In this document: piece after piece, positions 1,211 to 49,407 of the stretch
How positions within the stretch are numbered: position 1 is the stretch's first letter
Layout: each line of letters opens with the position of its first letter
NCBI RefSeq assembly: GCF_006345805.1
Contig: NC_043016.1
Span: 27,156,001 to 27,220,000 of the forward strand
Source: Octopus sinensis
Taxonomy: Eukaryota
DNA: 64,000 nucleotides
Direction: 5' to 3'
Translations under genes and position numbers: made by a program
Notes under the pieces: model-generated
What the model saw: only the letters and a program-made list of their open reading frames with translations
What the model was told of the DNA's origin: nothing
The model's database searches: none

Positions 1211-1409
1211 AAGAAAATTAGATGTCAAAGGAATATCTTAAGAACTTCACTAGCTTACAGTTGTTTCTTCTGTAAGATGCGGTGGACTCTGATGAAGCTA
1301 TAAGGTGTTACTCAGACACTCAGCTGTGAGTCCACTGCATCTTATAGCAGAAACAGTTGTAAGCTTATGAAGTTCATAATCACTTATTCCTTTGTCATCT
1401 CATTTTCTT
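1211..1409. repeat. ~200-bp palindromic element
   Basis: Arms 1211-1235/1385-1409 and 1243-1289/1328-1374 are roughly 80-90% reverse complements. Confidence 0.85.
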
Positions 1410-4714: not shown

Positions 4715-4890
4715 AGTATTATCATCATCATCATGTGTCCGCTTTCCATGCTAGCATGGGTTGGACGGTTCAACTGGGGTCTGTGAAGCCAGAAGGCTGC
4801 ATCAGGCCCAGTCTGATCTGGCAGTGTTTCTACGGCTGGATGCCCTTCCTAACGCCAACCAGTCCGTGTGTGTAGTGGGTGCTTTTTACA
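4715..4890 (-). mobile_element. 5'-truncated RTE 3' end
   Basis: Matches the 3' UTR subtype of the 39397-43879 copy. Confidence 0.85.
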
Positions 4891-12104: not shown

Positions 12105-12466
12105 GTGTAGTGGGTGCTTTTTACGTGCCACCCGCACAGGTGCCAGGCAAGGCTGGCAACGGCCACGGTTGGATTGATGTATTTTACGTGCCACCGGCAC
12201 GACTGGCTTCTGTGCCGGTGGCACGTAAAATGCACCAATCCGACCGTGACCGTTGCCAGTCTTGCCTGGCACCTGTGCAGGTGGCATGTAAAAAGCACCC
12301 ACTACACTCACGGAGTGGTTGGCGTTAGGAAGGGCATCCAACTGTAGAAACATTACCAGATAAGACTGGAGCCTGGTGCAGCCTCCTGGCTTCCCAGATC
12401 CCCGGTCGAACCATCCAACCCATGCTAGCATGGAGAACGGACGTTAAACGATGATGATGATGATGA
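12105..12466 (+). mobile_element. RTE 3' end with 96-bp fold-back inversion, inserted in the Penelope-like relic
   Basis: 12212-12466 matches 39005-39254. 12105-12200 is the reverse complement of 12212-12307. Confidence 0.88.
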
Positions 12467-13204
12467 TTTATAGTCTGCACCATCTCTGTACATAATAGAT
12501 TTGTGCACTCAAGGAAACTGAAGGAGCAGCATTTTATATTGTAACTTAGAACCATGGCAATGCTGGATTTAAATAAAGGTTTTAAGTTCTACTCTTACAT
12601 CCCCACTTAATTCAGTAGTACTATTTTCATTCTTCGGCCTCCCCCTCATTTTCCCCTCCACTTCACTCTCATCACTTCTTATCCTTTTACATTTCTCTTT
12701 CTTTTAACTTCTTTTGTCTACTTTTTCCTACCAATGTATGCAAGTCCAAGTTGTCTTGCAGCCAGTTTCTCAAACATAGAGGATGCAAAATTTTGCTGAA
12801 TCTTTTATTTCCCTCGTGTATTCTTGACCTCGAAGAAAGATTCTGTCCAAAACATTGGTTACTGCACTCTCCAAACAGTTTCACTGCGTACTTTGTTGCT
12901 TTTGCCAAATAATTCTAGATATATATGCAGGCATGTGTGTGTGTATGCATGTGTGTTTATATATATAATGTAATATATGTGGTAAAGTTTCAACAAGTAA
13001 AATAGCACTTAGCTAAGAGAGTAAAGATATAATAAAAACCCACAAGGCTTGTGAAATACAATGGCCCAGGGTTTCCTGATCAAAACAGTTATTGAGACGG
13101 TAATTTAGTTTACCATTTATCAAGCTGGTAAAAGCAAGACAGTTTATTTACTTATCTGTCTTATTGAAATGGTGAGACAAATATTTCAGCCACCCACGAA
13201 ACCT

Positions 13205-13235
<31 letters not shown>

Positions 13236-13819
13236 CATTTTCAAGGTGGGTAATGCTGTAAATGATAGCCTGTAAATATGAGGTTAAAAAAACCTATTGG
13301 ATAGAAAAAGTTGAAGACTGCCTGTGGGGCTTGAACCTACATCTTCCAGATGTTTTACCATTGGATTGAAGCAATCTTTTGAATTTATCTCTGCAAAGGG
13401 TCTTTTATCCCAATATTTCCTTGCTATCATTTATCAAGTGCAAGTTCATCAGTTAAGTTATTTCACATCTCTTGAAGCTTCTAAATTCTTTTGATGTAAA
13501 CTATACATTATGTGTGTGTGTGTGTATATACATATGCAAAAGATAAAAATTGTTTGAATTTTGCTCTTTTTGATTGATGAATGTGTGTTTTTGTATTGTC
13601 CATGTAAATGAGTTTTGTCAACATTTTATGAAATTTTTTTTATTTTGAAATATTTTCACACTTTTTATTATTTTTTTTAGAAAAAGATATTTGCTGCCAA
13701 ATTCCTTATAAAGCCATGACACAAAATTCTGTTTTCTTATTAAAATATTCCCAAACTGAATTATAAATATATTAATATTTGCCAGTTTCCTTTGTATAAT
13801 GTACTAACTACTGTGATAA

Positions 13820-16103: not shown

Positions 16104-16460
16104 CATGCCACTGGCACAAGTGCCAGTAAGGCGTTACCAGCGTCACCTTACTGACATTTGTGCCCGTGGCATTTGAAAAAACATTTTGAGTGAGGTTGTT
16201 GCCAGTGGACTGACTCCTGTGCAGATGGCATGTAAAAAACACCATTGCCAGTACTGCCTGACTGGCCCTCATGCCAGTGGCACGTAAAAGCACCCACTAC
16301 ACTCTCGTAGTGGTTGGTGTTAGGAAGGGCATCCAGCTGTAGCAACTCTGCCAGATCAGATTGGAGCCTGGTACAGCCATCTGGTTCGCCAGTCCTCAGT
16401 CAAATCGTCCAACCCATGCTAGCATTGAAAGTGGGCATTAAACGATGATGATGATGATGA
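16104..16460 (+). mobile_element. RTE 3' end nested in a family C SINE
   Basis: GGCACGTAAAAGCACC modules and a (GAT)n tail. The SINE sequence resumes after 16460. Confidence 0.8.
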
Positions 16461-22230: not shown

Positions 22231-25200
22231 GTACCATCAGAAATTTCATTTATTGTCTTAAATGTCACCAATATCAACCAAATTATTGGATGTTGTTTAT
22301 ATACATTGCTGATTACAATGCGTTTTCAATTCTTTCTTGATTATGCCATTCTTTTCCATCATCTTCCCATCATTGCAGAGACCATCTGAGTTAGCTTTTC
22401 CAGTCTCTTGGAAAAACAGGAGTAGGTTAGATGATCACATCTGCTTCAAGAAGATCGTGTTACCTGTTAGGTGTCACTTCAACTCATCTGTCATATTGTT
22501 TCATATCATGGCTTCCCTACTGCTTGCCATCACAAAAAAACAACTTTATCTTCTATCTCTGTTGCACCACCTCCCCAGGCATGGATAGCCCATATACATT
22601 CACATAATTGCATCCTATTGTTACCATAATCTATTCTCCTATATTGCACCTACATGTGATATACCATGTTTTTGCATAAATCTCACAAACTATACACACT
22701 TAACCTACATGTCTTTACATCCATGTAGATTGAATGTACTACACACACACACACATAATTACTCACTTCACACTAACATACAGAAGCACATTTTTAACTA
22801 ACTACTTCTACCCACATTTCTCACCTTAGCATGCCACATGTACACATCATGCACAGACAGACTTCATTTACCTCACATCTGTTTCTATACATCCATATTG
22901 CATAAACCTATTATAACATATATGCACAACATAACCAATTTTTATGTATGCATGTGTTTGTGCCAGTGTGTACATACATACATTTCTTCTTGTTTGGCTG
23001 TCTGTCATTGGGTGAGATTGACTATTCTTGTTCAGTGATCATCTCTGGCAGGCTCACATGTGGGCTATAGGTCCTGCTCTTGATCTGCAGCAGCAGTGAT
23101 GACATCTGCTGCAGGTGAAGTTACTTGACCCAACAGAGAAATGATGCCTCTTATGTGCTCTTTTGTAAAGAGCTTCAGCTATTGGTGTCAGTTATTGCAC
23201 TACAGGGCCTACTCCCACTAGGTAGTCTGGGGAGATACCAAAGTTCTTCATATGTCTCTTTAACACATTCTTCTATTGCAACTTCTGGCCAACACAGCTC
23301 TGCTTGCCTCAATGCAATTCAGCATAGAAAACTGACATTATTTACATTCTGAATTGGACATATATTAAAAGGGTGACTGTTGCATGCCCAAACACATGAA
23401 CTTTATATTCCTCAACACATTAGATGCTGCAATATTACAGATTCAACCATGCATTTCGCCCCTGCCTCCAACCACAGTCTCTCCTTCACTTACCCACACA
23501 ATAACCCACTCTTTCCCATCCCTAACTTCACTTACTCTCACAATGGCCCAAGTTCTGTTTCCACTTTGAATCTTGCTGTCTCACTCTAGAGCTTACTTTT
23601 TACACCAAACTTACAATATAAAGCTGTTATAAATTCAGTATCATTTCTATTTCTCTCCTATGTCTTTACCTGAAATGTTAAATCTCTTCTATTCCTTCCA
23701 GTGGCATACTTATTTTTGTTATCTTTTCTTTTACTTGTTTCAGTCAGACTATAGCCATGCTGGGGAACACTGCCTTCAAGAATTTCAGTTGTTCAAATCA
23801 GTACTTATTTTTTTGAGCCTTGTACTTATCTGTCAGTCTCTTTTGACAAACCACTAAGTTACAAGGATGTAAGCACATCAATACTAGTTGTCAAGCAGTG
23901 ATGGGGGACAGGGACACAAAGGTACACATACAAACATAGATATATATATTACATGGAGAAATGTGAGCATGAAAAGTAATATTCTTAAGATTATAAACCT
24001 GGAAAAGTACAGGACAAGTTATTACACCTGTAAAAGTTTAGGACAAGCTATTACTTCTAGTAAAGTAAAGAATAAGAAACTTTACTTAAAATATTGCAGC
24101 AAAGAATGCTAGTTCTTCTAATTTATCACTCTTTACAGTTCTCGTCTTTTAAATTTATTGTACAAAATTTGTAAGTTTGTCTAATTAGTCACTTTTTTCA
24201 GTATTTAAGGTAGTAAATTAGCCAAATTCTTCTTAAATAAGTATAGCGTTACTTCCTTACTGACATGAAATTTTGTGGCATTTTCTTCTACTAATTGTTG
24301 TTCAATGCGACTAATGACTCTGAATTCTTCATACGTTTTTCTATCAATAAGCCTAAGAAAGGTATACTTTTATTTTAAGATTAATAAATTTATGTTGATT
24401 GAAGATGAATATCTGCCTCACTGACCACTTGAGGTCTGACATATTTTGATGTAACTTTTTTTCTACTGAATCAAATCTCAAACTATTTATGCCAAAGTGT
24501 AGCTGAGGAGGTGTCCTCTTTAAAACTATTAACAGTTTGCAATTTAGTTGAGAACTGAATTAGTGGTGAAGCTTGGAAACTGCTGTAATTCTCAAAATGG
24601 TGGACTTAAGAATATATTCAACCACTACCGTGGTTGAATGGTGATGGGTTTCTTTCAATTTCCATCTAACAGATCTACTCATAAGGCTTTGATTGGTACA
24701 AGGCTATAATAGAAGACATTTGCCCAAGGTGCCACACAATGGGACTGAACCATATAGCTGGAATGCAAATTTCTTACTGGTACATATTCTTTGTTACTGT
24801 TTTATTTCATATTTCTATGCTTTTTTAAATGTTTTTTTATGTTTAATGTCATACTTACATCTTTGCTTCCTTCCCTTATTTATCTTTTTTTTTTGGATCC
24901 TTTTTTTTTTGTATTATATCCTTATGCCTTTGCTGAACAAATGAGTGCTACTTTGTTTTAGCTGCCCCACCAATTATTCAGACAGTTAATTAACTGGTCA
25001 TTGAATATGTAAGGCCAAGCGTTCTGTAGACATGTGTAAACTTAACATAAATCTCAGGCAGAAACTGCATGATACAGAGACTAGGCAGTACTTTATGAAT
25101 TGTAGTAACAATCTATTTAATGGGCTTCAACACAGTTTCCATTCAGAATATAAGGGTTGATCAAACTATAGATGACATTTGAACAAGATACCCAGCAATG

Positions 25201-27819: not shown

Positions 27820-27991
27820 CAGTTCTATATTTGAGAGATGAGGAATTGTATACATTATTTACATTTGACAGGTATTTATCCTCATCTTATTTGTTTTTAA
27901 CACAATGTTTCGGCTGTATACTCTCCAGCCTTCTTCAGGTGTTCATTGAAAAATACTTAAGGATCGAGAACCCAGGTTTGAAATTTCCCCA
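27820..27991 (-). mobile_element. 172-bp non-autonomous HHR-bearing insert
   Basis: Flanked by a perfect 12-bp direct repeat TTTATAACAATG (27808-27819 and 27992-28003). Contains the minimal HHR. Confidence 0.7.
27900..27942 (-). ncRNA. Minimal (Penelope-type) hammerhead ribozyme, one core-adjacent substitution
   Basis: Minus strand reads ACAC-CUGAAGA-A-GGCUG-gagaguaua-CAGCC-GAAAC-AU-U-GUGU. Stems I and II are perfect. The loop-less stem III is ACAU where the palindromic ACGU is expected. Confidence 0.7.
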
Positions 27992-37250: not shown

Positions 37251-37350
37251 NNNNNNNNNNNNNNNNNNNNNNNNNNNNNNNNNNNNNNNNNNNNNNNNNN
37301 NNNNNNNNNNNNNNNNNNNNNNNNNNNNNNNNNNNNNNNNNNNNNNNNNN
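37251..37350. other. Assembly gap (100 N, true size unknown)
   Basis: Run of exactly 100 N. The left side ends inside a MITE and the right side starts inside a LINE RT region. Confidence 0.99.
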
Positions 37351-39254
37351 GCTGGATCAGGTAATGAAGGTTACGGAGAGGGTTATAGCTCAATTAATTA
37401 GAGAGAGAGTTAGCTTAGATGATATGCAGTTTGGGTTTGTGCCAGGGAAAAGTACTACCGATGCTATATCCTGGTAAGACAGCTGCAGGAGAAATACCTA
37501 GCCAAAAGAAAGCCCTTGTACCTGGCTTTTGTTGACTTGAGAAAGCCTTTGACAGGGTCCCCCGATCCCTTATCTGGTGGTCAATGAGGGGAAACTAGGG
37601 ATAGATGAATAGTTAGTGAGAGCTGTGCGCGCCATGTACAGAGACGCTGTAGTAAGGTGAGAGTTGGCAACGAGTACAGTGAAGAATTCCGGGGTAGAGG
37701 TTGGGGTCCACCAAGGTTCAGTCCTCAGTCCCCTCCTATTTATCATAGTCCTCCAGGCAATAACGGAGGAATTCAAGACAGGTGCCCCTGGGAGCTCCTC
37801 TATGCTGATGACCTTGCTCTAATTGCTGAGTCACTATCAGAACTGGAGAAGAAGTTCAGGTGTGGAACAAGGATTAGAATCGAAGGGCCTTAGAATCAAC
37901 CTAGCCAAAACCAAAGTCCTAATAAGTAGGAAGGTGGACCAATCACAAACGACTTCAGGTAGATGGCCCTGCTCGATCTGTAAACAAAGTGTAGGTAGAA
38001 ACTCTATAAGGTGCACCAAGTGTAAGCTATGGACACATAAGAGTGCAGCAATGTCAAAGGAAGGCTAACTAGGAAAATAGTTTTTGTCTGTGGCAGATGC
38101 TCAGGAGCAATAAACACTGGTAATGTGCAGAGACCAACTTCTACCACGTTCCAGGGAGACAAACTAGAAGTAGTTGATAGCTTCCGCTACCTAGGAGACC
38201 AAGTCAGTAGCGGGGGTGGGTGTGCTGAAAGTGTAACTGCTAGAGTAAGAATAGCCTGGGCAAAGTTTAGAGAGCTCTTACCCCTGCTGGTGACAAAAGG
38301 CCTCTCGCTCAGAGTAAAAGGCAGACTGTATGATGCATGTGTACATACAGCCATGCTACATGGTAGTGAAACATGGGCCGTGACTGCTGAAGATATGCGT
38401 AAGCTCGCAAGAAATGAAGCCAGTATGCTCCGATGGATGTGTAATGTCAGTGTGCATGTTCGACAGAGCGTTAGTACCTTGAGAGAAATGTTGGACCTAA
38501 GGAGCATCAGTTGTGGTGTGCAAGAGAGACGATTGCACTGGTATGGCCAGTGGCGAGAATGGATGAAGATAGGTGTGTGAAAAAGTGCCAATCCCGTGGA
38601 AGAGGTAGACCCAGGAAAACTTGGGACGAGGTGGTGAAGCATGACCTTCGAACTTTAGGTCTCACTGAGGACATGACCAGCGTCCGAGACCTTTGGAAAT
38701 ATACTGTGCGTGAAAAGACCAGACAGGACAAGTGAGTCCAGCCCACTTATGCATGCCTTTCCTCCCTTGGACACACAAAGACCTGTTGAGGCAAGCGAAG
38801 TCGATATCGAACCTCATCCGACGACAGGCACCTATGCCAACCTCACTTTGCTTGCGAAGACCTGTTGGGGCAAGTGAAATCGGAATCGAAATTGAACCAA
38901 TCCTATGACTGGCACCCGGCAGATGCCAGGACCCCTGGACTGGAGATACGTAAAAAGCACTATCCGAATCATGGCCGATGCCAGTCCCGCCTCGACTGGC
39001 TTCCGTGCCGGTGGCACGTAAAATGCACCAATCCGACCGTGGCCGATGCCAGCCTCGCCTGGCACTAGTGCAGGTGGCATGTAAAAAGCACCCATTACAC
39101 TCACGGAGTGGTTGGCGTTAGGAAGGGCATCCAGTTGTAGAAACATTGCCAGATAAGACCGGAGCCTGGTGCAGCCTTCTGGCTTCCCAGATCCCCGTCC
39201 GAACCGTCCAACCCATGCTAGCATGGAGAACGGACGTTAAACGATGATGATGAT
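37351..39254 (+). mobile_element. RTE-clade LINE, RT plus 3' UTR (5' part lost in gap)
   Basis: Nearly the same RT sequence as the 39397 copy (QFGFVPGKSTTDA, LLYADDL, FRYLGDQV, GSETWAV), (GAT)n tail. The 3' UTR is of a different subtype. Confidence 0.92.
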
Positions 39255-39396
39255 ATATATATATGTATATATATACATACATATATATACACACACACAC
39301 ACACACATATATACATACATATATATGTATGTATATATATATATTATATATATATATATAATATAATATATATAATATATATATACATATATATAC

Positions 39397-42300
39397 AGCG
39401 TGCCAAAAGTAAAGGCATTTGAAAGATACATTCGAACTTAATCGGTTGTACTTTTTGCATACGAGACTCCGGTATCGTTTTTCATCTAGTACAGCAAATT
39501 ATTTTCATAACAAACTGTGCTGACGAAGTTACAGATATCCTTGTGATATTAATAACTGAAACCGTTCGGTACACAGGTGATTATTCCTTTTCGTATATTT
39601 CTTTTGTCTTATCTATTGCTTTGGGTCGTGCTGAATTTTGTTTTATTTAAGTGAATCGTCCAACCTCGCTACGACTACCTTCTTTCTTGCACTTATCCTT
39701 ATTCTTTCTCTATTCTTCAATTTCCATCTCATTGTATTGTCACTCATTCTTTCAGTATTCCCTCATTACCCTGTCTAGCTCAAACATTTTTTTTTCGTTT
39801 AGACTTGTCTCCAGGTTCATAGCCACTCTGATTTTTCAATTTTTCATTTAGTATTGTCTCCCGATTCATACAAACCCATTTGTTAGCTCACGATTAAAGA
39901 AACTCTTTACTCAGCTACGGTGCACCCGCCCTCCCACCCCCACCACGCATGCCGGAAGTTCCTATTCTCTTCCATTCTGGGTTGCTTCCCATGAAGACTG
40001 CAAATGCTCTCCCATCCATACCCCTCCCTACCCCTAGTCTCGACCTATGTAAGGTAATGTTCATACAGTGCAAAATATGAAAGGCTAGCGTTATGCAGGT
40101 TGTACTGAAGGCTACTTTACTACTTCATTTCTTGCACATGAATTCTGCCAAATGCGAGCTTTCTTTTCAGGTACACGAAGCTACTGTCCACCGTCCCAGG
40201 GTCTCTAGAGCCCATGCCTTCCACACCCTCAGGGTTGGCACCCTCAACGTTGGCACCCTCAACGTTGGCACCCTCAACGTTGGCACTCTGAAAGGTAGGT
40301 CTGGTGAGATAGTCGAGATGCTTGAACGGAGATGTGGGATATATGTTGCATGCAAGAAATAAGGTGGAGAGGAGGATCAGCTAGGTTCCTCACAGGCAAG
40401 GAACGCAGGTACAGATTTTCTGGGCAGGGAACACTGACGGGGGGGTGGCGTGGGTATACTTATCGCTGAGAAATGGGTAGATAAGTAATTGAGGTAATCA
40501 GAGTAAGTGACAGAATACTTAAGATTAGATTAGTGCTTCATCATAGTTTAGCAACCATTATATCAGCCTATGCTCCTCAGTCGGGGCTACCCGATGGACA
40601 GAAGACCGATTCTATGACACTCTACTGCAGACTACCTCATTGACGAACGACAGAGACCTTATCTTTGTGGCTGGTGACTTCAATGGTCACGTTGGACGAC
40701 ATGCTGGGGGCTTCCATGGCGTACATGGAGGCTATGGCTATGGCTCCCGCAACGAGGAGGGAACCAGGCTGCTGGAGTTCTGCGATGCAAATAATCTTAT
40801 GATTTGCAACACTAACTTCAGGAAACCTACCAGCCACCTAGTCACTTACCAATCGGGCCAACATACCAGCCAAATTGACTACATCCTTACAAGGCAAAGG
40901 GAGAGATGGCTGCTTATAAATGCCAAAACCTTCCCAGGTGAAGAATGTACCCCACAACATAGACTGGTAGTTAGTGACTTTAGGATCAGGACTAGGAGGA
41001 CAACCAGAAGACGACAAATATGGAGAAGAAGGATCTGGAAGCTAAAGATCCTGCAAATGGACAGAGATTTAGGGACATATTACTTGAAGCCTCTGACGAA
41101 GTAGAAGGGGATAGAGCATCACAGGGGTAGAAGACAGCTGGACGTTTCTAAGGGACAACCTGCTGAGAGCCACTGACCAGATCTGTGGCTGGTGCAAAGT
41201 CCCCTCTCGACCTAGAATAACGTGGTGGTGGAACAATATTGTAGACAGGGCTATTAGAGAAAAGAGACAGGCTTGGAAGGTCTGGAAAAATGGGGGTAGC
41301 AGGGAATTGTATCAGACTGCCAAAAGAGAAGCTAGGAGACAGGTTTATTTAGCCAGAGGGGAAGCAGATAAGAAAAATTTGCCAATGTTCTGCGCCGTGA
41401 GGACCAAAGACTGGAGGTGTTTCGTGTTGCAAGACAGTGTGTGAGAGAGAATCGTGATGTGGTAGGAGAGAGAGAAGTGTGTTCGCATGGAAGATGGTTC
41501 ACTTGCGCTAAATGAGGATGCAAAGAGAGAGGTTTGGAGATGCCACTATGAAAGGTTGCTGAATGAAGAAAATGTATGGGATAAAGAGAGTCTGCCGAAT
41601 GTTGACCCAACAGAGGGACCAGCTATCCGAGTTGATAGTTCTGTGGTAGCTAAGGCAATTAGAAGCATGAAGACAGGGAAAGCCCCAGGCCCATCAGGAA
41701 TCACTGCAGAGATGCTCAAAATGTCTGGTAGTATGTCGGCTATAGCCTAGTCACCCATATAGTTAATCAGGTGATACACAAAGGGGTCATACCAATGACT
41801 GGTGTAGCAGTATAATAGTCAACTGCTACAAAGGTAAAGGTGATGCCCTAGATACAAATAACTACAGAGGTATCAAGCTGTTGGACCAGGTGATGAAGGT
41901 TACGGAGAGGGTCATAGCCCAACTAATTAGAGAGAGAGTTAGTTTAGATGAGATGCAGTTTGGGTTTGTGCCAGGGAAAAGTACTACTGATGCTATATTC
42001 CTGGTAAGGCAGCTGCAGGAGAAATACCTAGCCAAAGATAAGCCCCTGTACCTGGCTTTTGTTGACATGGAGAAAGCCTTCGACAGGGTCCCCCGATCCC
42101 TTATCTGGTGGGCAATGAGAAAACTAGGGATAGATGAATGGTTAGTGAGAGCTGTGCGGGCCATGTATAGGGACGCCGCTAGTAGGGTGAGGGTTGGAAA
42201 TGAGTACAGTGAAGAATTCCGGGTAGAGGTAGGGGTCCACCAAGGCTCAGTCCTCAGCCCCCTCCTATTTATCATAGTCCTCCAGGCAATAACGGAGGAA

Positions 42301-43879
42301 TTCAAGACAGGATGCCCTTGGAGCTCCTCTATGCTGATGACCTTGCTCTAATTGCTGAGTCGCTATCAGAACTGGAGGAGAAGTTTCAGGTGTGGAAACA
42401 AGGATTAGAATCGAAGGGCCTCAGAGTCAATCTAGCTAAAACCAAAGTCGTAATCAGTAGGAAGGTAGACAAATCACAAACACCTTCAGGTAGATGGCCC
42501 TGCTCGATCTGTAGAAAAGGTGTAGGTAGAAACTCTATAAGATGCACCAAGTGTAAGCTATGGACACATAAGAGATGCAGCAATGTCAAAGGAAGGCTAA
42601 CTAGGAAGATGGTTTGTTGTATGTGGCAGATGCTCAGGAACAATAAACACTGAAAATGCTCTGAGACCAACTTCCGTCACTTTCCAGGGAGAAAAACTAG
42701 AAATAGTTGATAGTTTCCGTTACCTAGGTGACCAAGTCAGCAGCGGGGGGGGGTGCTGAAAGTGTAACTGCTAGAGTAAGAATAGCTTGTGCAAAGTTCA
42801 GAGAGCTCTTACCTCTGCTGGTGACAAAGGCCTCTCGCACAGAGTGAAAGGCAGACTGTATGATGCGTGTGTACGAACAGCCATGCTACATGGCAGTGAA
42901 ACATGGGCCGTGACTGCTGAGGATATGCGTAAGCTCGCTAGAAATGAAGCCAGTATGCTCCGATGGATGTGTAATGCGGTACTCACACTCGGCAGAGTGT
43001 AAGTACCTTGAGAGAAAAGCTGGACCTAAGAAGCATCAGTTGTGGTGTGCAAGAGAGACGTTTGCGCTGGTATGGTCATGTGGCGAGAATGGATGAAGAT
43101 AGTTGTGTGAAAAAGTGCCACACCCTAGCGGTTGAGGGAACCTGTGGAAGAGGCAGACCCAGGAAAACCTGGACGAGGTGGTGAAGCACGACCTTCGAAC
43201 TTTAGGTCTCACTGAGGAAATGACTAGAGACCGAGACCTCTGGAAGTGTGCTATGCGCGAGAAGACCCGCAGGACAAGTGAGTCCACAACCCGTGGCCTT
43301 CTACATGGGATGGAGCCAGCCTACGTATGCATACCTTCCCTTCTTGGGACACAAAACTCTACTTGTGAGACGTGTTGAGGCAAGTGAGGATCAGAATCGA
43401 AATCGATCAATGGAAATTGCGGATGTGCTACCAGTGCCGGTGGCATGTCGAAACTCTGCTTGTGAAGACCCATTGAGGCAAGTGAGGATCAGAATCGAAA
43501 TCGATCAATGGAAATCGATCAATGGAAATTGCAGATGTGTTACCAGTGCCGGTGGCATGTAAGAGAACTTTCCGTTTCGTGACCGTTGCCAGCACCGCCC
43601 CGTTCGTTCGTGTCCGTTGCCAGCCTCGCTGGCACATAAAAAGCACCATCCGTTCGTGGCCGTTTGCCAGCTCTGTCTGGCACCAGTGCGGGTGGCACGT
43701 AAAATGCACCCACTACACTCACGGAGTGGTTGGCGTTAGGAAGGGCATCCAGCCGTAGAAACACTGCCAGATTTGACTGGGCCTGATGAAGCCTTCTGGC
43801 TTCACAGACCCCAGTAGAACCGTCCAACCCATGCTAGCATGGAAAACGGACGCTAAATGATGATGATGATGATGATGAT
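39397..43879 (+). mobile_element. Near-full-length RTE-clade LINE (APE endonuclease + RT), frameshifted; 5' boundary tentative
   Basis: Endonuclease motifs (LRVGTLNVGTLKGRS, AGDFNGHVG, SQIDYIL), RT motifs (QFGFVPGKSTTDAIF, FVDMEKAFDRVPR, GVHQGSVLSPLLF, LLYADDL), GRPRKTW thumb, 3' UTR and (GAT)n tail. Coding part about 40171-43280. Inclusion of 39397-40170 as leader is inferred. Confidence 0.9.
39515..39576 (+). ncRNA. Type-I hammerhead ribozyme (intact core)
   Basis: Stem I CUGUG/CACAG, core CUGACGA (39520-26), stem II AGUUA/UAACU plus distal GAUAUC/GAUAUU, GAAA (39558-61), stem III ACC/GGU with GUUC loop, GUA cleavage triplet (39569-71). Confidence 0.85.
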
Positions 43880-43964
43880 TGAGAACATAATCTTTGTGGA
43901 GAATGGCGATTTGATGTCTATATCTAGATGTTGACTGTCCACTTTTTCGTGTTCAGCCTTAATT

Positions 43965-44016
<52 letters not shown>

Positions 44017-44301
44017 TGTAGTATTCCATTAAGAATGTATTAGCATACAGTATAGAGCTGTTGTGTTGAGACAATCGTAGCAATAAGTGTCCATCCATAT
44101 TCCCTCTTCCTGACTCCAATTTTATTTATTTATTATGTATGTATATATATATATATATGCTTGTTTAATTTCAAATGAAGTTTTGTGACACTCAAGTGTC
44201 ATGTCACAGCAATCTGATTTGCAGCTTTAGTAATATAAACACACATACAAAGCAGAAAAATAAAAGGAAAATAGAAAAAAATTAACAAAAAATTTTCTTA
44301 C

Positions 44302-44460
44302 TTCTAATTGATTTCCAACATCCTCTTTCATAGGCAGAAATGAAAACCGATAAATTCTAGTTTTATTAGGAACCAAATACAAATCTCCATTTTCTCCTTC
44401 ACATTCAGATGCAGCAGTTATTCCATGGCCATCATTTACAACACAGTATTGATTGTATAC
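44302..44460 (-). CDS. TRAPPC11: TRAPPC11 coding exon
   Basis: VYNQYCVVNDGHGITAASECEGENGDLYLVPNKTRIYRFSFLPMKEDVGNQLE aligns to human EYNQFCVIEE...[26 protein letters not shown]. 159 nt, phase 0/0. Confidence 0.92.
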
Positions 44461-44624
44461 CTGTAAATATAATATTTACAATTCAGTTAAGCAGAGGTGA
44501 AGTAGTTTTTATTAACATTGCAAAATATTTAATTCATGATAATTTAACCATTTAGCATTTAAAACAGCCATATCTAGCCCAAATATTCTACTTGTTTGTT
44601 TAATGTTCAAAACTGGCCTGACCT

Positions 44625-47857: not shown

Positions 47858-49407
<1,550 letters not shown>

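What the first reader, a model, noticed from the sequence alone, without database searches (positions are those of the whole stretch)
39397..40233. Possible hammerhead-led 5' leader of an RTE LINE (Penelope-like leader on an APE-RT element)
Seen: an ~830-nt block between a (TA)n tract and the endonuclease ORF that keeps many CpGs, like the young LINE body, and carries the HHR about 120 nt from its start. Established: where self-cleaving ribozymes are described in R2/RTE-type leaders they are HDV-like, whereas HHRs typify Penelope-like elements. Inference: either this RTE family processes its 5' end with a hammerhead, which would be unusual, or the RTE sits next to an unrelated HHR element. No TSD was found to fix the boundary. 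TTATTCCTTT just 3' of the HHR also follows the HHR-like core at about 1384-1393, which could point to a separate HHR repeat family.
Basis: inference. Interest (0 to 1): 0.8.

Follow-up and report, generated by a model that had tools for sequence, protein, structure and literature searches.

The report
Lone hammerhead motif beside octopus LINE
A complete hammerhead-ribozyme motif sits in a 183-base fragment right in front of a decayed octopus RTE jumping gene, but two related full-length copies lack it, so it looks like a neighbouring Penelope-type remnant, not the LINE's own leader.

Summary
The block is real but is made of two parts. Bases 39398-39580 (183 nt) have balanced base composition and CpG o/e of about 1.6. 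They carry a complete type-I hammerhead (HHR) motif at 39515-39576, with predicted cleavage at A39571|C39572. It is the only such motif in the window; the chance rate is about 0.0008 per window. No Rfam hammerhead model detects it, and it has an A10.1-U11.1 pair.

Bases 39581-40137 are the RTE's own 557-nt 5'UTR. This has a pyrimidine-rich, CpG-rich variable part (39581-39917) and a leader (39918-40137) shared with two other 5'-complete copies, L001 (O. bimaculoides) and L055 (O. vulgaris). Neither copy has the HHR or anything like the 183-nt module upstream.

In a type-I HHR almost the whole ribozyme lies 5' of its cut. A 5'-processed LINE RNA would therefore lose it, unlike the HDV-like ribozymes of R2 and RTE.

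Best reading: a solitary Penelope/retrozyme-type HHR fragment lies next to the 5' end of a dead RTE. The HHR ends only 5 nt before the LINE's 5'UTR starts. A template-switch chimera or a lineage-specific leader therefore cannot be excluded without genome-wide copies. The supposed second HHR near 1384 is a long hairpin, not an HHR.

The parts
37353..39252 (+). RTE copy B: the 3' 1.9 kb of a second RTE, cut at its 5' side by an assembly gap (100 N, 37251-37350), ending in a (GAT)n tail
   Evidence: 83% identical to 41882-43870. Tail compared with 14 other RTE 3' ends.
39253..39397 (.). (TA)n/(CA)n microsatellite following the tail of copy B
   Evidence: TRF period 2, 73.5 copies; sequence.
39398..39514 (+). 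Upstream 117 nt of the HHR module: balanced base composition (Y=0.50), CpG-rich, no match elsewhere
   Evidence: Composition; CpG o/e 1.57 for 39398-39600. No copy in the window or in about 120 kb of other octopus loci.
39515..39576 (+). Type-I hammerhead motif. Helix I is 39515-19/39572-76 (CUGUG/CACAG). Core is CUGACGA (39520-26). Helix II is AGUUA/UAACU plus GAUAUC/GAUAUU (39527-57). GAA is at 39558-60. Helix III is ACC-GUUC-GGU (39561-70). H17 is A39571, with predicted cleavage at 39571|39572.
   Evidence: Descriptor scan; shuffles. The HHR fold scores -11.2 to -13.7 kcal/mol against an MFE of -16.2. Near-palindromic helix III, intermolecular duplex -13.2 kcal/mol. No Rfam hit.
39581..39917 (+). 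Variable part of the RTE 5'UTR: pyrimidine-rich (Y 0.62-0.73), G-poor, CpG-retaining, with a 49-nt tandem duplication (39791-39839/39840-39888)
   Evidence: R/Y change-point at 39581, LLR 10-12; composition like the upstream stretches of L055 and L001. 39825-39858 matches L001 9655-9687 (0/200 shuffles). Weak global match of 39581-39824 to L001 9458-9654 (p about 0.03). Direct repeat D1.
39918..40137 (+). Leader conserved among RTE copies, up to the ATG at 40138 (MNSAKCEL...)
   Evidence: Three-way alignment of window, L001 and L055; homology starts at CGGTGCACCC. The same N-terminus is seen in P0001.
40138..43283 (+). Degraded RTE ORF: APE endonuclease from about 40233, RT at about 41880-42460, PHD-like finger at about 42500-42600, broken by at least 6 frameshifts or stops. 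A 15-nt unit is repeated 4.2 times at 40224-40286.
   Evidence: ORF list and frames. Pfam Exo_endo_phos 36.9 bits and RVT_1 104.5 bits. Homologues are named CFDP2-like, from Octopus spp.. ORF end taken from L055. TRF.
43284..43882 (+). RTE 3'UTR (shared with SINE-like tails elsewhere in the window) and (ATG)n tail
   Evidence: Self-BLAST hits at 12216-12467, 4718-4889, 1030-1198 and 16258-16460; tails.

Best explanation
The 830-nt block is two things placed side by side.

(a) 39581-40137 is the 557-nt 5'UTR of a dead, full-length RTE-clade LINE (39581-43882).

(b) 39398-39580 is a separate, young-looking 183-nt fragment. Its 3' end is a complete type-I hammerhead with Penelope/retrozyme-type minimal architecture: a 5-bp open helix I, a long helix II, and a short near-palindromic helix III that favours action as a dimer.

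The fragment most likely comes from an HHR-bearing retroelement RNA, either a truncated Penelope-like element pLTR or a non-LTR retrozyme. It is not a heritable part of the RTE family. How it came to abut the LINE is inferred, not shown. It may have inserted on its own at the edge of the (TA)n tract. Alternatively, the RTE reverse transcriptase may have jumped from the 5' end of its own RNA onto an HHR-bearing RNA, giving a chimera.

If the locus is transcribed from upstream and the ribozyme is active, it would cut at A39571|C39572 and release an uncapped LINE RNA that starts 9 nt before the 5'UTR. That RNA would no longer carry the ribozyme.
For: Shown:
- The HHR core and three helices are present and unique in the window. 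Chance rate is 0.0008 per window.
- HHR-like motifs are enriched in octopus DNA: 4 in 182 kb against 0.067 expected.
- The composition change-point at 39581 lies 5 nt after helix I. Upstream Y=0.48-0.50; downstream Y=0.62-0.73, like the conserved leader and like the upstream stretches of L055 and L001.
- In L055 the analogous change-point coincides with the element's start at a (TA)n tract.
- The RTE leader is shared by three copies from 39918.
- The HHR module has no counterpart within 9.6 kb upstream in L001 or 4 kb upstream in L055.
- The module is single-copy in all sequence held.
- CpG o/e is 1.57 in the module against 0.49 in the RTE body.

From the literature:
- PLE min-HHRs have a helix I of 4-5 bp, a large helix II and a short palindromic helix III. 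They occur mostly as single motifs from truncated PLEs (PMC4209133).
- PLEs favour (TA)n or AT-rich targets (PMC8557442, PMC11167929).
- Penelope families are recently active in O. vulgaris (PMC13282606).
- The published octopus RTE-2_OV has a 5'UTR of about 600 nt (PMC9115989), which matches 557 nt.

From HHR topology (established): the type-I core lies 5' of the cut.
Against: - No PLE ORF, pLTR pair or tandem retrozyme unit is nearby.
- No second copy of the module was found, so a 'repeat family' is not demonstrated.
- No Rfam hammerhead hit, and A10.1-U11.1 replaces the usual G-C pair.
- The MFE fold competes with the HHR fold; z is only -1.7.
- The 5-nt adjacency of the HHR's end to the LINE's 5'UTR start would be a lucky accident for an independent insertion.
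- All three 5'-complete copies carry different CpG-rich sequence upstream of the shared leader. RTE 5' heads therefore seem exchangeable, and the module could be one.
- Only two comparator copies were available, both from other loci and probably other species.
Confidence: 0.55

Rival explanations
1. Heritable HHR-containing 5' head. The 183-nt module is the promoter-proximal start of this particular RTE variant, gained by 5'-UTR switching. Transcripts that begin in or before it are partly trimmed by the HHR to a defined 5'-OH end. Uncleaved transcripts pass the module on.
For: - The HHR ends 5 nt before the 5'UTR proper.
- The module is CpG-rich like the 5' extensions of other copies.
- The three copies have unrelated sequences upstream of a sharp common junction, as in the plant RTE '5' switching' described in bioRxiv 10.1101/2022.11.04.512097.
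- RTE-2_OV has a 5'UTR of about 600 nt (PMC9115989).
- A review notes that some LINEs and SINEs use hammerhead or HDV-like ribozymes (PMC6765202).
Against: - 0 of 2 other 5'-complete copies have it.
- Its composition differs sharply from the rest of the 5'UTR.
- Cleavage removes the ribozyme and any promoter from the RNA, so processed RNAs cannot transmit it.
- The short helix III predicts poor activity as a single copy (PMC4209133).
Confidence: 0.12
2. One-off chimera or 5' transduction. The module was copied together with this RTE insertion, either by RT template switching onto an HHR-bearing RNA or by read-through from the source locus. It has no role and no family.
For: - Direct abutment with no intervening microsatellite or tail.
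- No TSD at 39581, 39825 or 39918.
- Retrozyme and PLE RNAs are abundant possible templates for LINE RTs (PMC7229834).
- Template switching and 5' fusions are known for LINEs (discussed in bioRxiv 10.1101/2022.11.04.512097).
Against: - There is no TSD for 39398 either.
- CpG o/e is higher in the module than in the LINE body, which mildly suggests a different age. The numbers are small.
Confidence: 0.2
3. Chance motif. The sequence merely satisfies the HHR consensus and is not ribozyme-derived.
For: - No Rfam hit.
- A-U at 10.1-11.1.
- A competing MFE structure.
- No homologues to show covariation.
- At 0.0008 per 64 kb, a 2.7-Gb genome would hold a few dozen chance cases.
Against: - All invariant core positions and three helices (5, 5+6 and 3-4 bp) are present.
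- HHR-type motifs are 13-60 times enriched in the octopus DNA sampled.
- It lies in the most CpG-rich 200 nt of the region.
Confidence: 0.1

Closest known systems
Minimal type-I hammerheads of Penelope-like elements (pLTR HHRs; Cervera & de la Pena 2014, PMC4209133)
   Same: Type-I topology; short open helix I (5 bp); long helix II; short near-palindromic helix III (ACCGUUCGGU) suited to dimers. It occurs as a single motif, lies next to a (TA)n tract, and the host genus has active Penelope families (PMC13282606).
   Different: No RT/GIY-YIG ORF or second pLTR nearby. No related copies were found. A10.1-U11.1 with no bulged base at the start of helix II. Helix II is interrupted by a 2x2 internal loop.
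Metazoan non-LTR retrozymes (Cervera & de la Pena 2020, PMC7229834)
   Same: Type-I HHR in a short, non-coding, AT-rich unit of a few hundred nt. They are proposed to be copied by LINE or PLE reverse transcriptases.
   Different: There is no tandem array and only one HHR. The 183-nt piece is shorter than a full unit or is truncated.
HDV-like ribozymes at the 5' ends of R2, RTE, baggins and L1Tc LINEs (reviewed in PMC6765202)
   Same: A self-cleaving motif at the 5' edge of an APE/RT LINE that could free the LINE RNA from an upstream transcript.
   Different: HDV-like ribozymes cut at their own 5' end, stay in the LINE RNA and are conserved in the family. This HHR cuts at its 3' end, would be lost from the LINE RNA, and is absent from related copies. 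No HDV-like model hits the region.
RTE-clade LINEs with exchangeable 5'UTRs (SolRTE '5' switching', bioRxiv 10.1101/2022.11.04.512097) and octopus RTE-2_OV (PMC9115989)
   Same: Conserved body and leader with unrelated upstream 5'UTR sequence in different copies. The 5'UTR length (557 nt) matches the reported value of about 600 nt. Microsatellite tail.
   Different: The sequence of RTE-2_OV was not available for comparison. 5' switching here rests on only three copies.

Membership tests
Hammerhead ribozyme, type I | Invariant core C3 U4 G5 A6 N7 G8 A9 / G12 A13 A14 / A15.1-U16.1 / H17 (not G) | tested here: met
   CUGACGA ... GAA ... A39561-U39570, A39571.
Hammerhead ribozyme, type I | Three helices around the core, helix I open (5' and 3' ends in helix I) | tested here: met
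   Helix I 5 bp; helix II 5 bp + 6 bp; helix III 3-4 bp. It is the only hit in the window, and 2 of 2500 shuffles reach this quality.
Hammerhead ribozyme, type I | Match to a curated covariance model (Rfam Hammerhead_1/3/II/HH9/HH10) | tested here: not met
   No hit at gathering score or at E<=10 on 1 kb or on 101 nt. The long helix II and A10.1-U11.1 probably cost score. A second clean octopus motif (L002) is also missed.
Hammerhead ribozyme, type I | Conservation or covariation of helices in related sequences | not testable with these tools
   No homologue of 39398-39580 in the window, in about 120 kb of other octopus loci, or in the metagenome, genome and viral collections.
Hammerhead ribozyme, type I | Self-cleavage 3' of H17 | not testable with these tools
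   Needs an in vitro transcription assay.
Penelope-like element (pLTR hammerhead) | HHR with short helix I, large helix II and short palindromic helix III | tested here: met
   Compared with the description in PMC4209133. Intermolecular helix III duplex is -13.2 kcal/mol.
Penelope-like element (pLTR hammerhead) | HHR lies in a repeat flanking an RT + GIY-YIG ORF, or is a truncated copy of such an element | tested here: inconclusive
   No PLE-like ORF in the window or fetched loci. No reference octopus PLE was available to align with.
Non-LTR retrozyme | Tandem units of about 170-400 nt, each with a type-I HHR | tested here: not met
   Single HHR and no direct repeat of the flanks.
RTE-clade LINE (the neighbour) | Single ORF with N-terminal APE endonuclease and RT; short-repeat 3' tail | tested here: met
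   Pfam PF03372 and PF00078 above cut-off. Best homologues are Octopus CFDP2-like/RT proteins. (GAT/ATG)n tails. No tree was built to place it within the RTE clade.
Ribozyme-led LINE 5' leader (R2/RTE/L1Tc type) | Ribozyme lies inside the element, downstream of its own cleavage site, so it is inherited | tested here: not met
   Type-I HHR: 57 of 62 nt lie 5' of the cut at 39571|39572.
Ribozyme-led LINE 5' leader (R2/RTE/L1Tc type) | Ribozyme conserved at the 5' end of other full-length family members | tested here: not met
   Absent from L001 and L055, whose leaders align from 39918. Only two comparators.

The most novel reading that the evidence does not exclude
The HHR module is the lineage-specific 5' head of this RTE variant. 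It would have been captured from a Penelope or retrozyme RNA by 5' switching. It trims upstream-initiated or read-through transcripts at A39571|C39572, giving the LINE RNA a defined 5'-OH end 9 nt before its 5'UTR. This would be the first hammerhead-processed APE-type LINE, a functional analogue of the HDV-like ribozymes of R2 and RTE built from a different ribozyme with the opposite polarity.
Probability: 0.12. Interest if true: 0.7.

Novelty: new member of a known kind. Interest (0 to 1): 0.3.

Why it matters
If the best explanation holds, this is one more solitary Penelope/retrozyme-type hammerhead in a genome known to carry active Penelope elements. That is useful for annotation but not surprising.

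Two by-products may matter more to people who study octopus LINEs:
- This RTE lineage has a long 5'UTR of about 560 nt. Its distal part is pyrimidine-rich, CpG-rich, partly tandemly repeated, and differs between copies at a sharp junction (window 39918). This suggests exchangeable 5' heads, as described for plant RTEs.
- The HHR abuts that 5'UTR to within 5 nt. If this recurs genome-wide, it would show either LINE/HHR-RNA chimeras made by template switching, or a hammerhead used for LINE 5' processing.

Tried and rejected
- Rfam at gathering score and at E<=10 found no hammerhead or HDV-like hit.
- A self-BLAST of the block found no second copy in the window.
- An exact-product look-up of the 66-aa ORF inside the block found nothing on record.
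- A metagenome scan for CTGACGAAGT-N(10-35)-ACTGAAACCG gave 48 hits. All are chance: none has HHR helices and none matches the block.
- Scans of genome contigs and viral contigs for RTE relatives or the conserved leader found nothing.
- The O. vulgaris transcriptome supplement of PMC9115989 is truncated and holds neither RTE-2_OV nor the k-mers tested.
- A TSD search at four candidate 5' boundaries found none.
- A chain of short collinear matches seen by eye between 39478-39574 and 39840-39925 hinted that the leader junction is a decayed HHR. It is not significant against shuffles and I dropped it.
- The '1384' HHR-like core was rejected as a hairpin.
- The sigma-70 promoter scan is irrelevant to an animal genome.
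- The RTE copies in L002, L003, L005 and two further copies in L055 are 5'-truncated or too diverged to inform the 5' end.
Full report
**Context.** The window is octopus DNA. The best protein matches of the LINE are 'craniofacial development protein 2-like' and RT proteins of Octopus bimaculoides, O. sinensis and O. vulgaris.

The local layout is as follows.
- RTE copy B (37353-39252). It is 5'-truncated at a 100-N assembly gap, 83% identical to copy A, and ends in (GAT)n.
- A (TA/CA)n microsatellite (39253-39397).
- The block in question.
- RTE copy A. It has an APE endonuclease (Pfam PF03372, 36.9 bits) and an RT (PF00078, 104.5 bits). Its ORF is broken at least six times. It ends in an (ATG)n tail at about 43882.

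**The observation.**
- The hammerhead motif is there. It reads CUGUG / CUGACGA / AGUUA...UAACU (extended by GAUAUC/GAUAUU) / GAA / ACC-GUUC-GGU / A | CACAG, at 39515-39576 on the + strand.
- A descriptor needing helix I >=4, II >=3 and III >=2 bp finds only this site in both strands of the window.
- Dinucleotide or block shuffles give 0.053-0.057 such hits per window, and 0.0008 at the observed quality.
- A looser 'min-HHR' descriptor gives 4 hits in 182 kb of octopus DNA against 0.067 expected. Hammerhead-type motifs are therefore genuinely enriched in these genomes.

Points against the motif:
- No Rfam hammerhead model reports it, even at E<=10 on 101 nt.
- The 10.1-11.1 pair is A-U, not the usual G-C.
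- The MFE structure pairs part of the core. The HHR fold scores -11.2 to -13.7 kcal/mol against -16.2, and z is -1.7.
- No homologue exists to test covariation.

The CpG observation holds. o/e is 1.10 for 39398-39917 and 1.57 for 39398-39600, against 0.49-0.52 in the RTE bodies and 0.23-0.32 in background.

The second 'HHR-like core' near 1290-1350 is the apex of a 57-bp hairpin (-71.1 kcal/mol, z -9.5) and is not a hammerhead. The shared 10-mer TTATTCCTTT occurs four times in the window.

**Where the LINE begins.** Only two other copies with an intact 5' region could be fetched.
- L001 is on an O. bimaculoides chromosome and was reached via P0001.
- L055 is on an O. vulgaris chromosome and was reached via P0071. 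It holds a nearly intact copy 88% identical to copy A, with ORFs of 594 and 443 aa.

A three-way alignment shows common homology starting sharply at window 39918 (CGGTGCACCC), which equals L001 9794 and L055 24104.

Upstream of that point the three sequences do not align with one another, with two exceptions:
- a 34-nt match of 39825-39858 to L001 9655-9687 (0/200 shuffles);
- a weak global match of 39581-39824 to L001 9458-9654 (p about 0.03 by two nulls).

Yet all three upstream stretches share a character. They are CpG-rich (o/e 1.0-1.7), pyrimidine-rich and G-poor, like the conserved leader itself and unlike background. Two contain short tandem duplications: 3 x about 60 nt in L055 and 2 x 49 nt at 39791-39888 in the window. 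A younger copy from another assembly (L004) has more than 800 nt of CpG-rich tandem repeats in the same place.

I therefore read these stretches as exchangeable distal 5'UTRs. This is the pattern described as '5' switching' for plant RTEs (bioRxiv 10.1101/2022.11.04.512097).

A maximum-likelihood purine/pyrimidine change-point puts the start of this stretch at 39581 in the window (LLR 10-12). In L055 it falls at 23787/8, exactly where that element meets a (TA)n tract. With the ATG at 40138, the window's 5'UTR is 557 nt. This is close to the roughly 600 nt reported for the brain-expressed RTE-2_OV (PMC9115989).

**What the hammerhead belongs to.** The 183 nt from 39398 to 39580 have balanced composition (Y 0.48-0.50, skews near 0) and the highest CpG retention of the region. 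They match nothing else held. They have no counterpart upstream of the L001 or L055 copies.

The motif's build is what Cervera & de la Pena describe for Penelope-like-element hammerheads, which they found mostly as single motifs from truncated elements (PMC4209133):
- a 5-bp open helix I;
- a long helix II;
- a short helix III whose sequence ACCGUUCGGU is nearly self-complementary, with an intermolecular duplex of -13.2 kcal/mol.

Penelope-like elements prefer (TA)n or AT-rich targets (PMC8557442, PMC11167929). Thirty Penelope families are recently active in O. vulgaris (PMC13282606).

I could not find a Penelope ORF, a second pLTR or a tandem retrozyme unit nearby. I had no octopus Penelope reference to align. 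The assignment therefore rests on architecture and context, not on homology.

**Mechanism.** In a type-I hammerhead, 57 of the 62 nt lie 5' of the scissile bond. If a transcript coming from upstream were cut at A39571|C39572, the LINE RNA would start 9 nt before its 5'UTR, with a 5'-OH and without the ribozyme.

This is the opposite of the HDV-like ribozymes of R2, RTE, baggins and L1Tc. Those cut at their own 5' end and stay in the element (PMC6765202). A hammerhead in this position can be inherited only through uncleaved transcripts. Together with its absence from two related copies, this argues against a family-level 'hammerhead leader'.

This step is inference from established hammerhead topology. 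Activity was not tested. Copy A is in any case dead.

**The loose end.** The hammerhead stops 5 nt before the LINE's 5'UTR begins, with no microsatellite or tail between them and no TSD at any candidate boundary. An independent insertion would land there only by luck.

Two other routes explain the abutment directly and remain open:
- a chimera, made when the RTE reverse transcriptase jumped from the 5' end of its RNA onto an HHR-bearing RNA, since retrozyme RNAs are abundant and proposed LINE/PLE templates (PMC7229834);
- a lineage-specific 5' head.

I rate the options as follows:

| Reading | Confidence |
|---|---|
| Foreign HHR fragment, origin of the juxtaposition unresolved | 0.55 |
| One-off chimera or 5' transduction | 0.20 |
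| Heritable leader | 0.12 |
| Chance motif | 0.10 |

**Limits.** The comparison rests on two other copies from other loci. The species of the window was not determined.

**Verdict.** This is an ordinary kind of object, a solitary Penelope/retrozyme-type hammerhead motif, in an unusual position immediately in front of an RTE 5'UTR. The 'hammerhead-led RTE leader' reading is not supported as a property of the family. It survives only as a low-probability, testable possibility.

Noticed in passing
window 1245-1372: Near-perfect 57-bp inverted repeat that folds into one long hairpin (-71.1 kcal/mol, z -9.5). It lies just after an RTE/SINE-like tail. It could be a foldback or MITE-like element, or a hairpin-RNA locus.
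   Followed up: partly
window 27899-27943 (-) and 13409-13457 (-): Two further hits to a minimal type-I hammerhead descriptor. The first reads AACAC/CUGAAGA/A-GGCUG..CAGCC/GAAA/CAU-U/GUGUU, with the bulged base typical of PLE min-HHRs. It lies among SINE copies at 27.5-28.8 kb.
   Followed up: partly
L002 19404-19451 (-), O. sinensis CM016860.1: Compact, clean type-I hammerhead motif: helix I 6 bp, helix II 4 bp, helix III 4 bp, also with A10.1-U11.1. It is unrelated in sequence to the window's motif and is also missed by Rfam.
   Followed up: partly
window 39918; L001 9794; L055 24104: Three RTE copies share a sharp 5' homology boundary. Upstream of it each has different CpG-rich, pyrimidine-rich, partly tandem-repeated sequence. 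This suggests exchangeable 5'UTR heads in octopus RTEs.
   Followed up: partly
L004 1-840 (GCA_024449705.1 contig JAANSU014725947.1): An RTE copy with more than 800 nt of CpG-rich (o/e 1.6-2.0) tandem repeats of about 30/60 nt upstream of the ORF. The gene caller annotated them as a 232-aa 'protein'. They probably form a monomer-type LINE promoter.
   Followed up: no
window 44230-44475 (-): An ORF with an AG acceptor and a GTAAG donor at its borders (VYNQYCVVNDGHG...GNQLE), which looks like an exon. It has no homologue in the protein collection.
   Followed up: partly
window 40224-40286: A 15-nt unit (CACCCTCAACGTTGG) repeated 4.2 times at the very start of the endonuclease domain of RTE copy A. 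L001 and L055 have one copy, so this is a copy-specific in-frame expansion.
   Followed up: no
window 37251-37350: A run of 100 N (assembly gap) that cuts the 5' side of RTE copy B. The true upstream structure of copy B is therefore unknown.
   Followed up: no
window 48020-49200: About 1.2 kb of (TA)n-rich microsatellite. It is the largest of many TA/CA tracts in the window.
   Followed up: no
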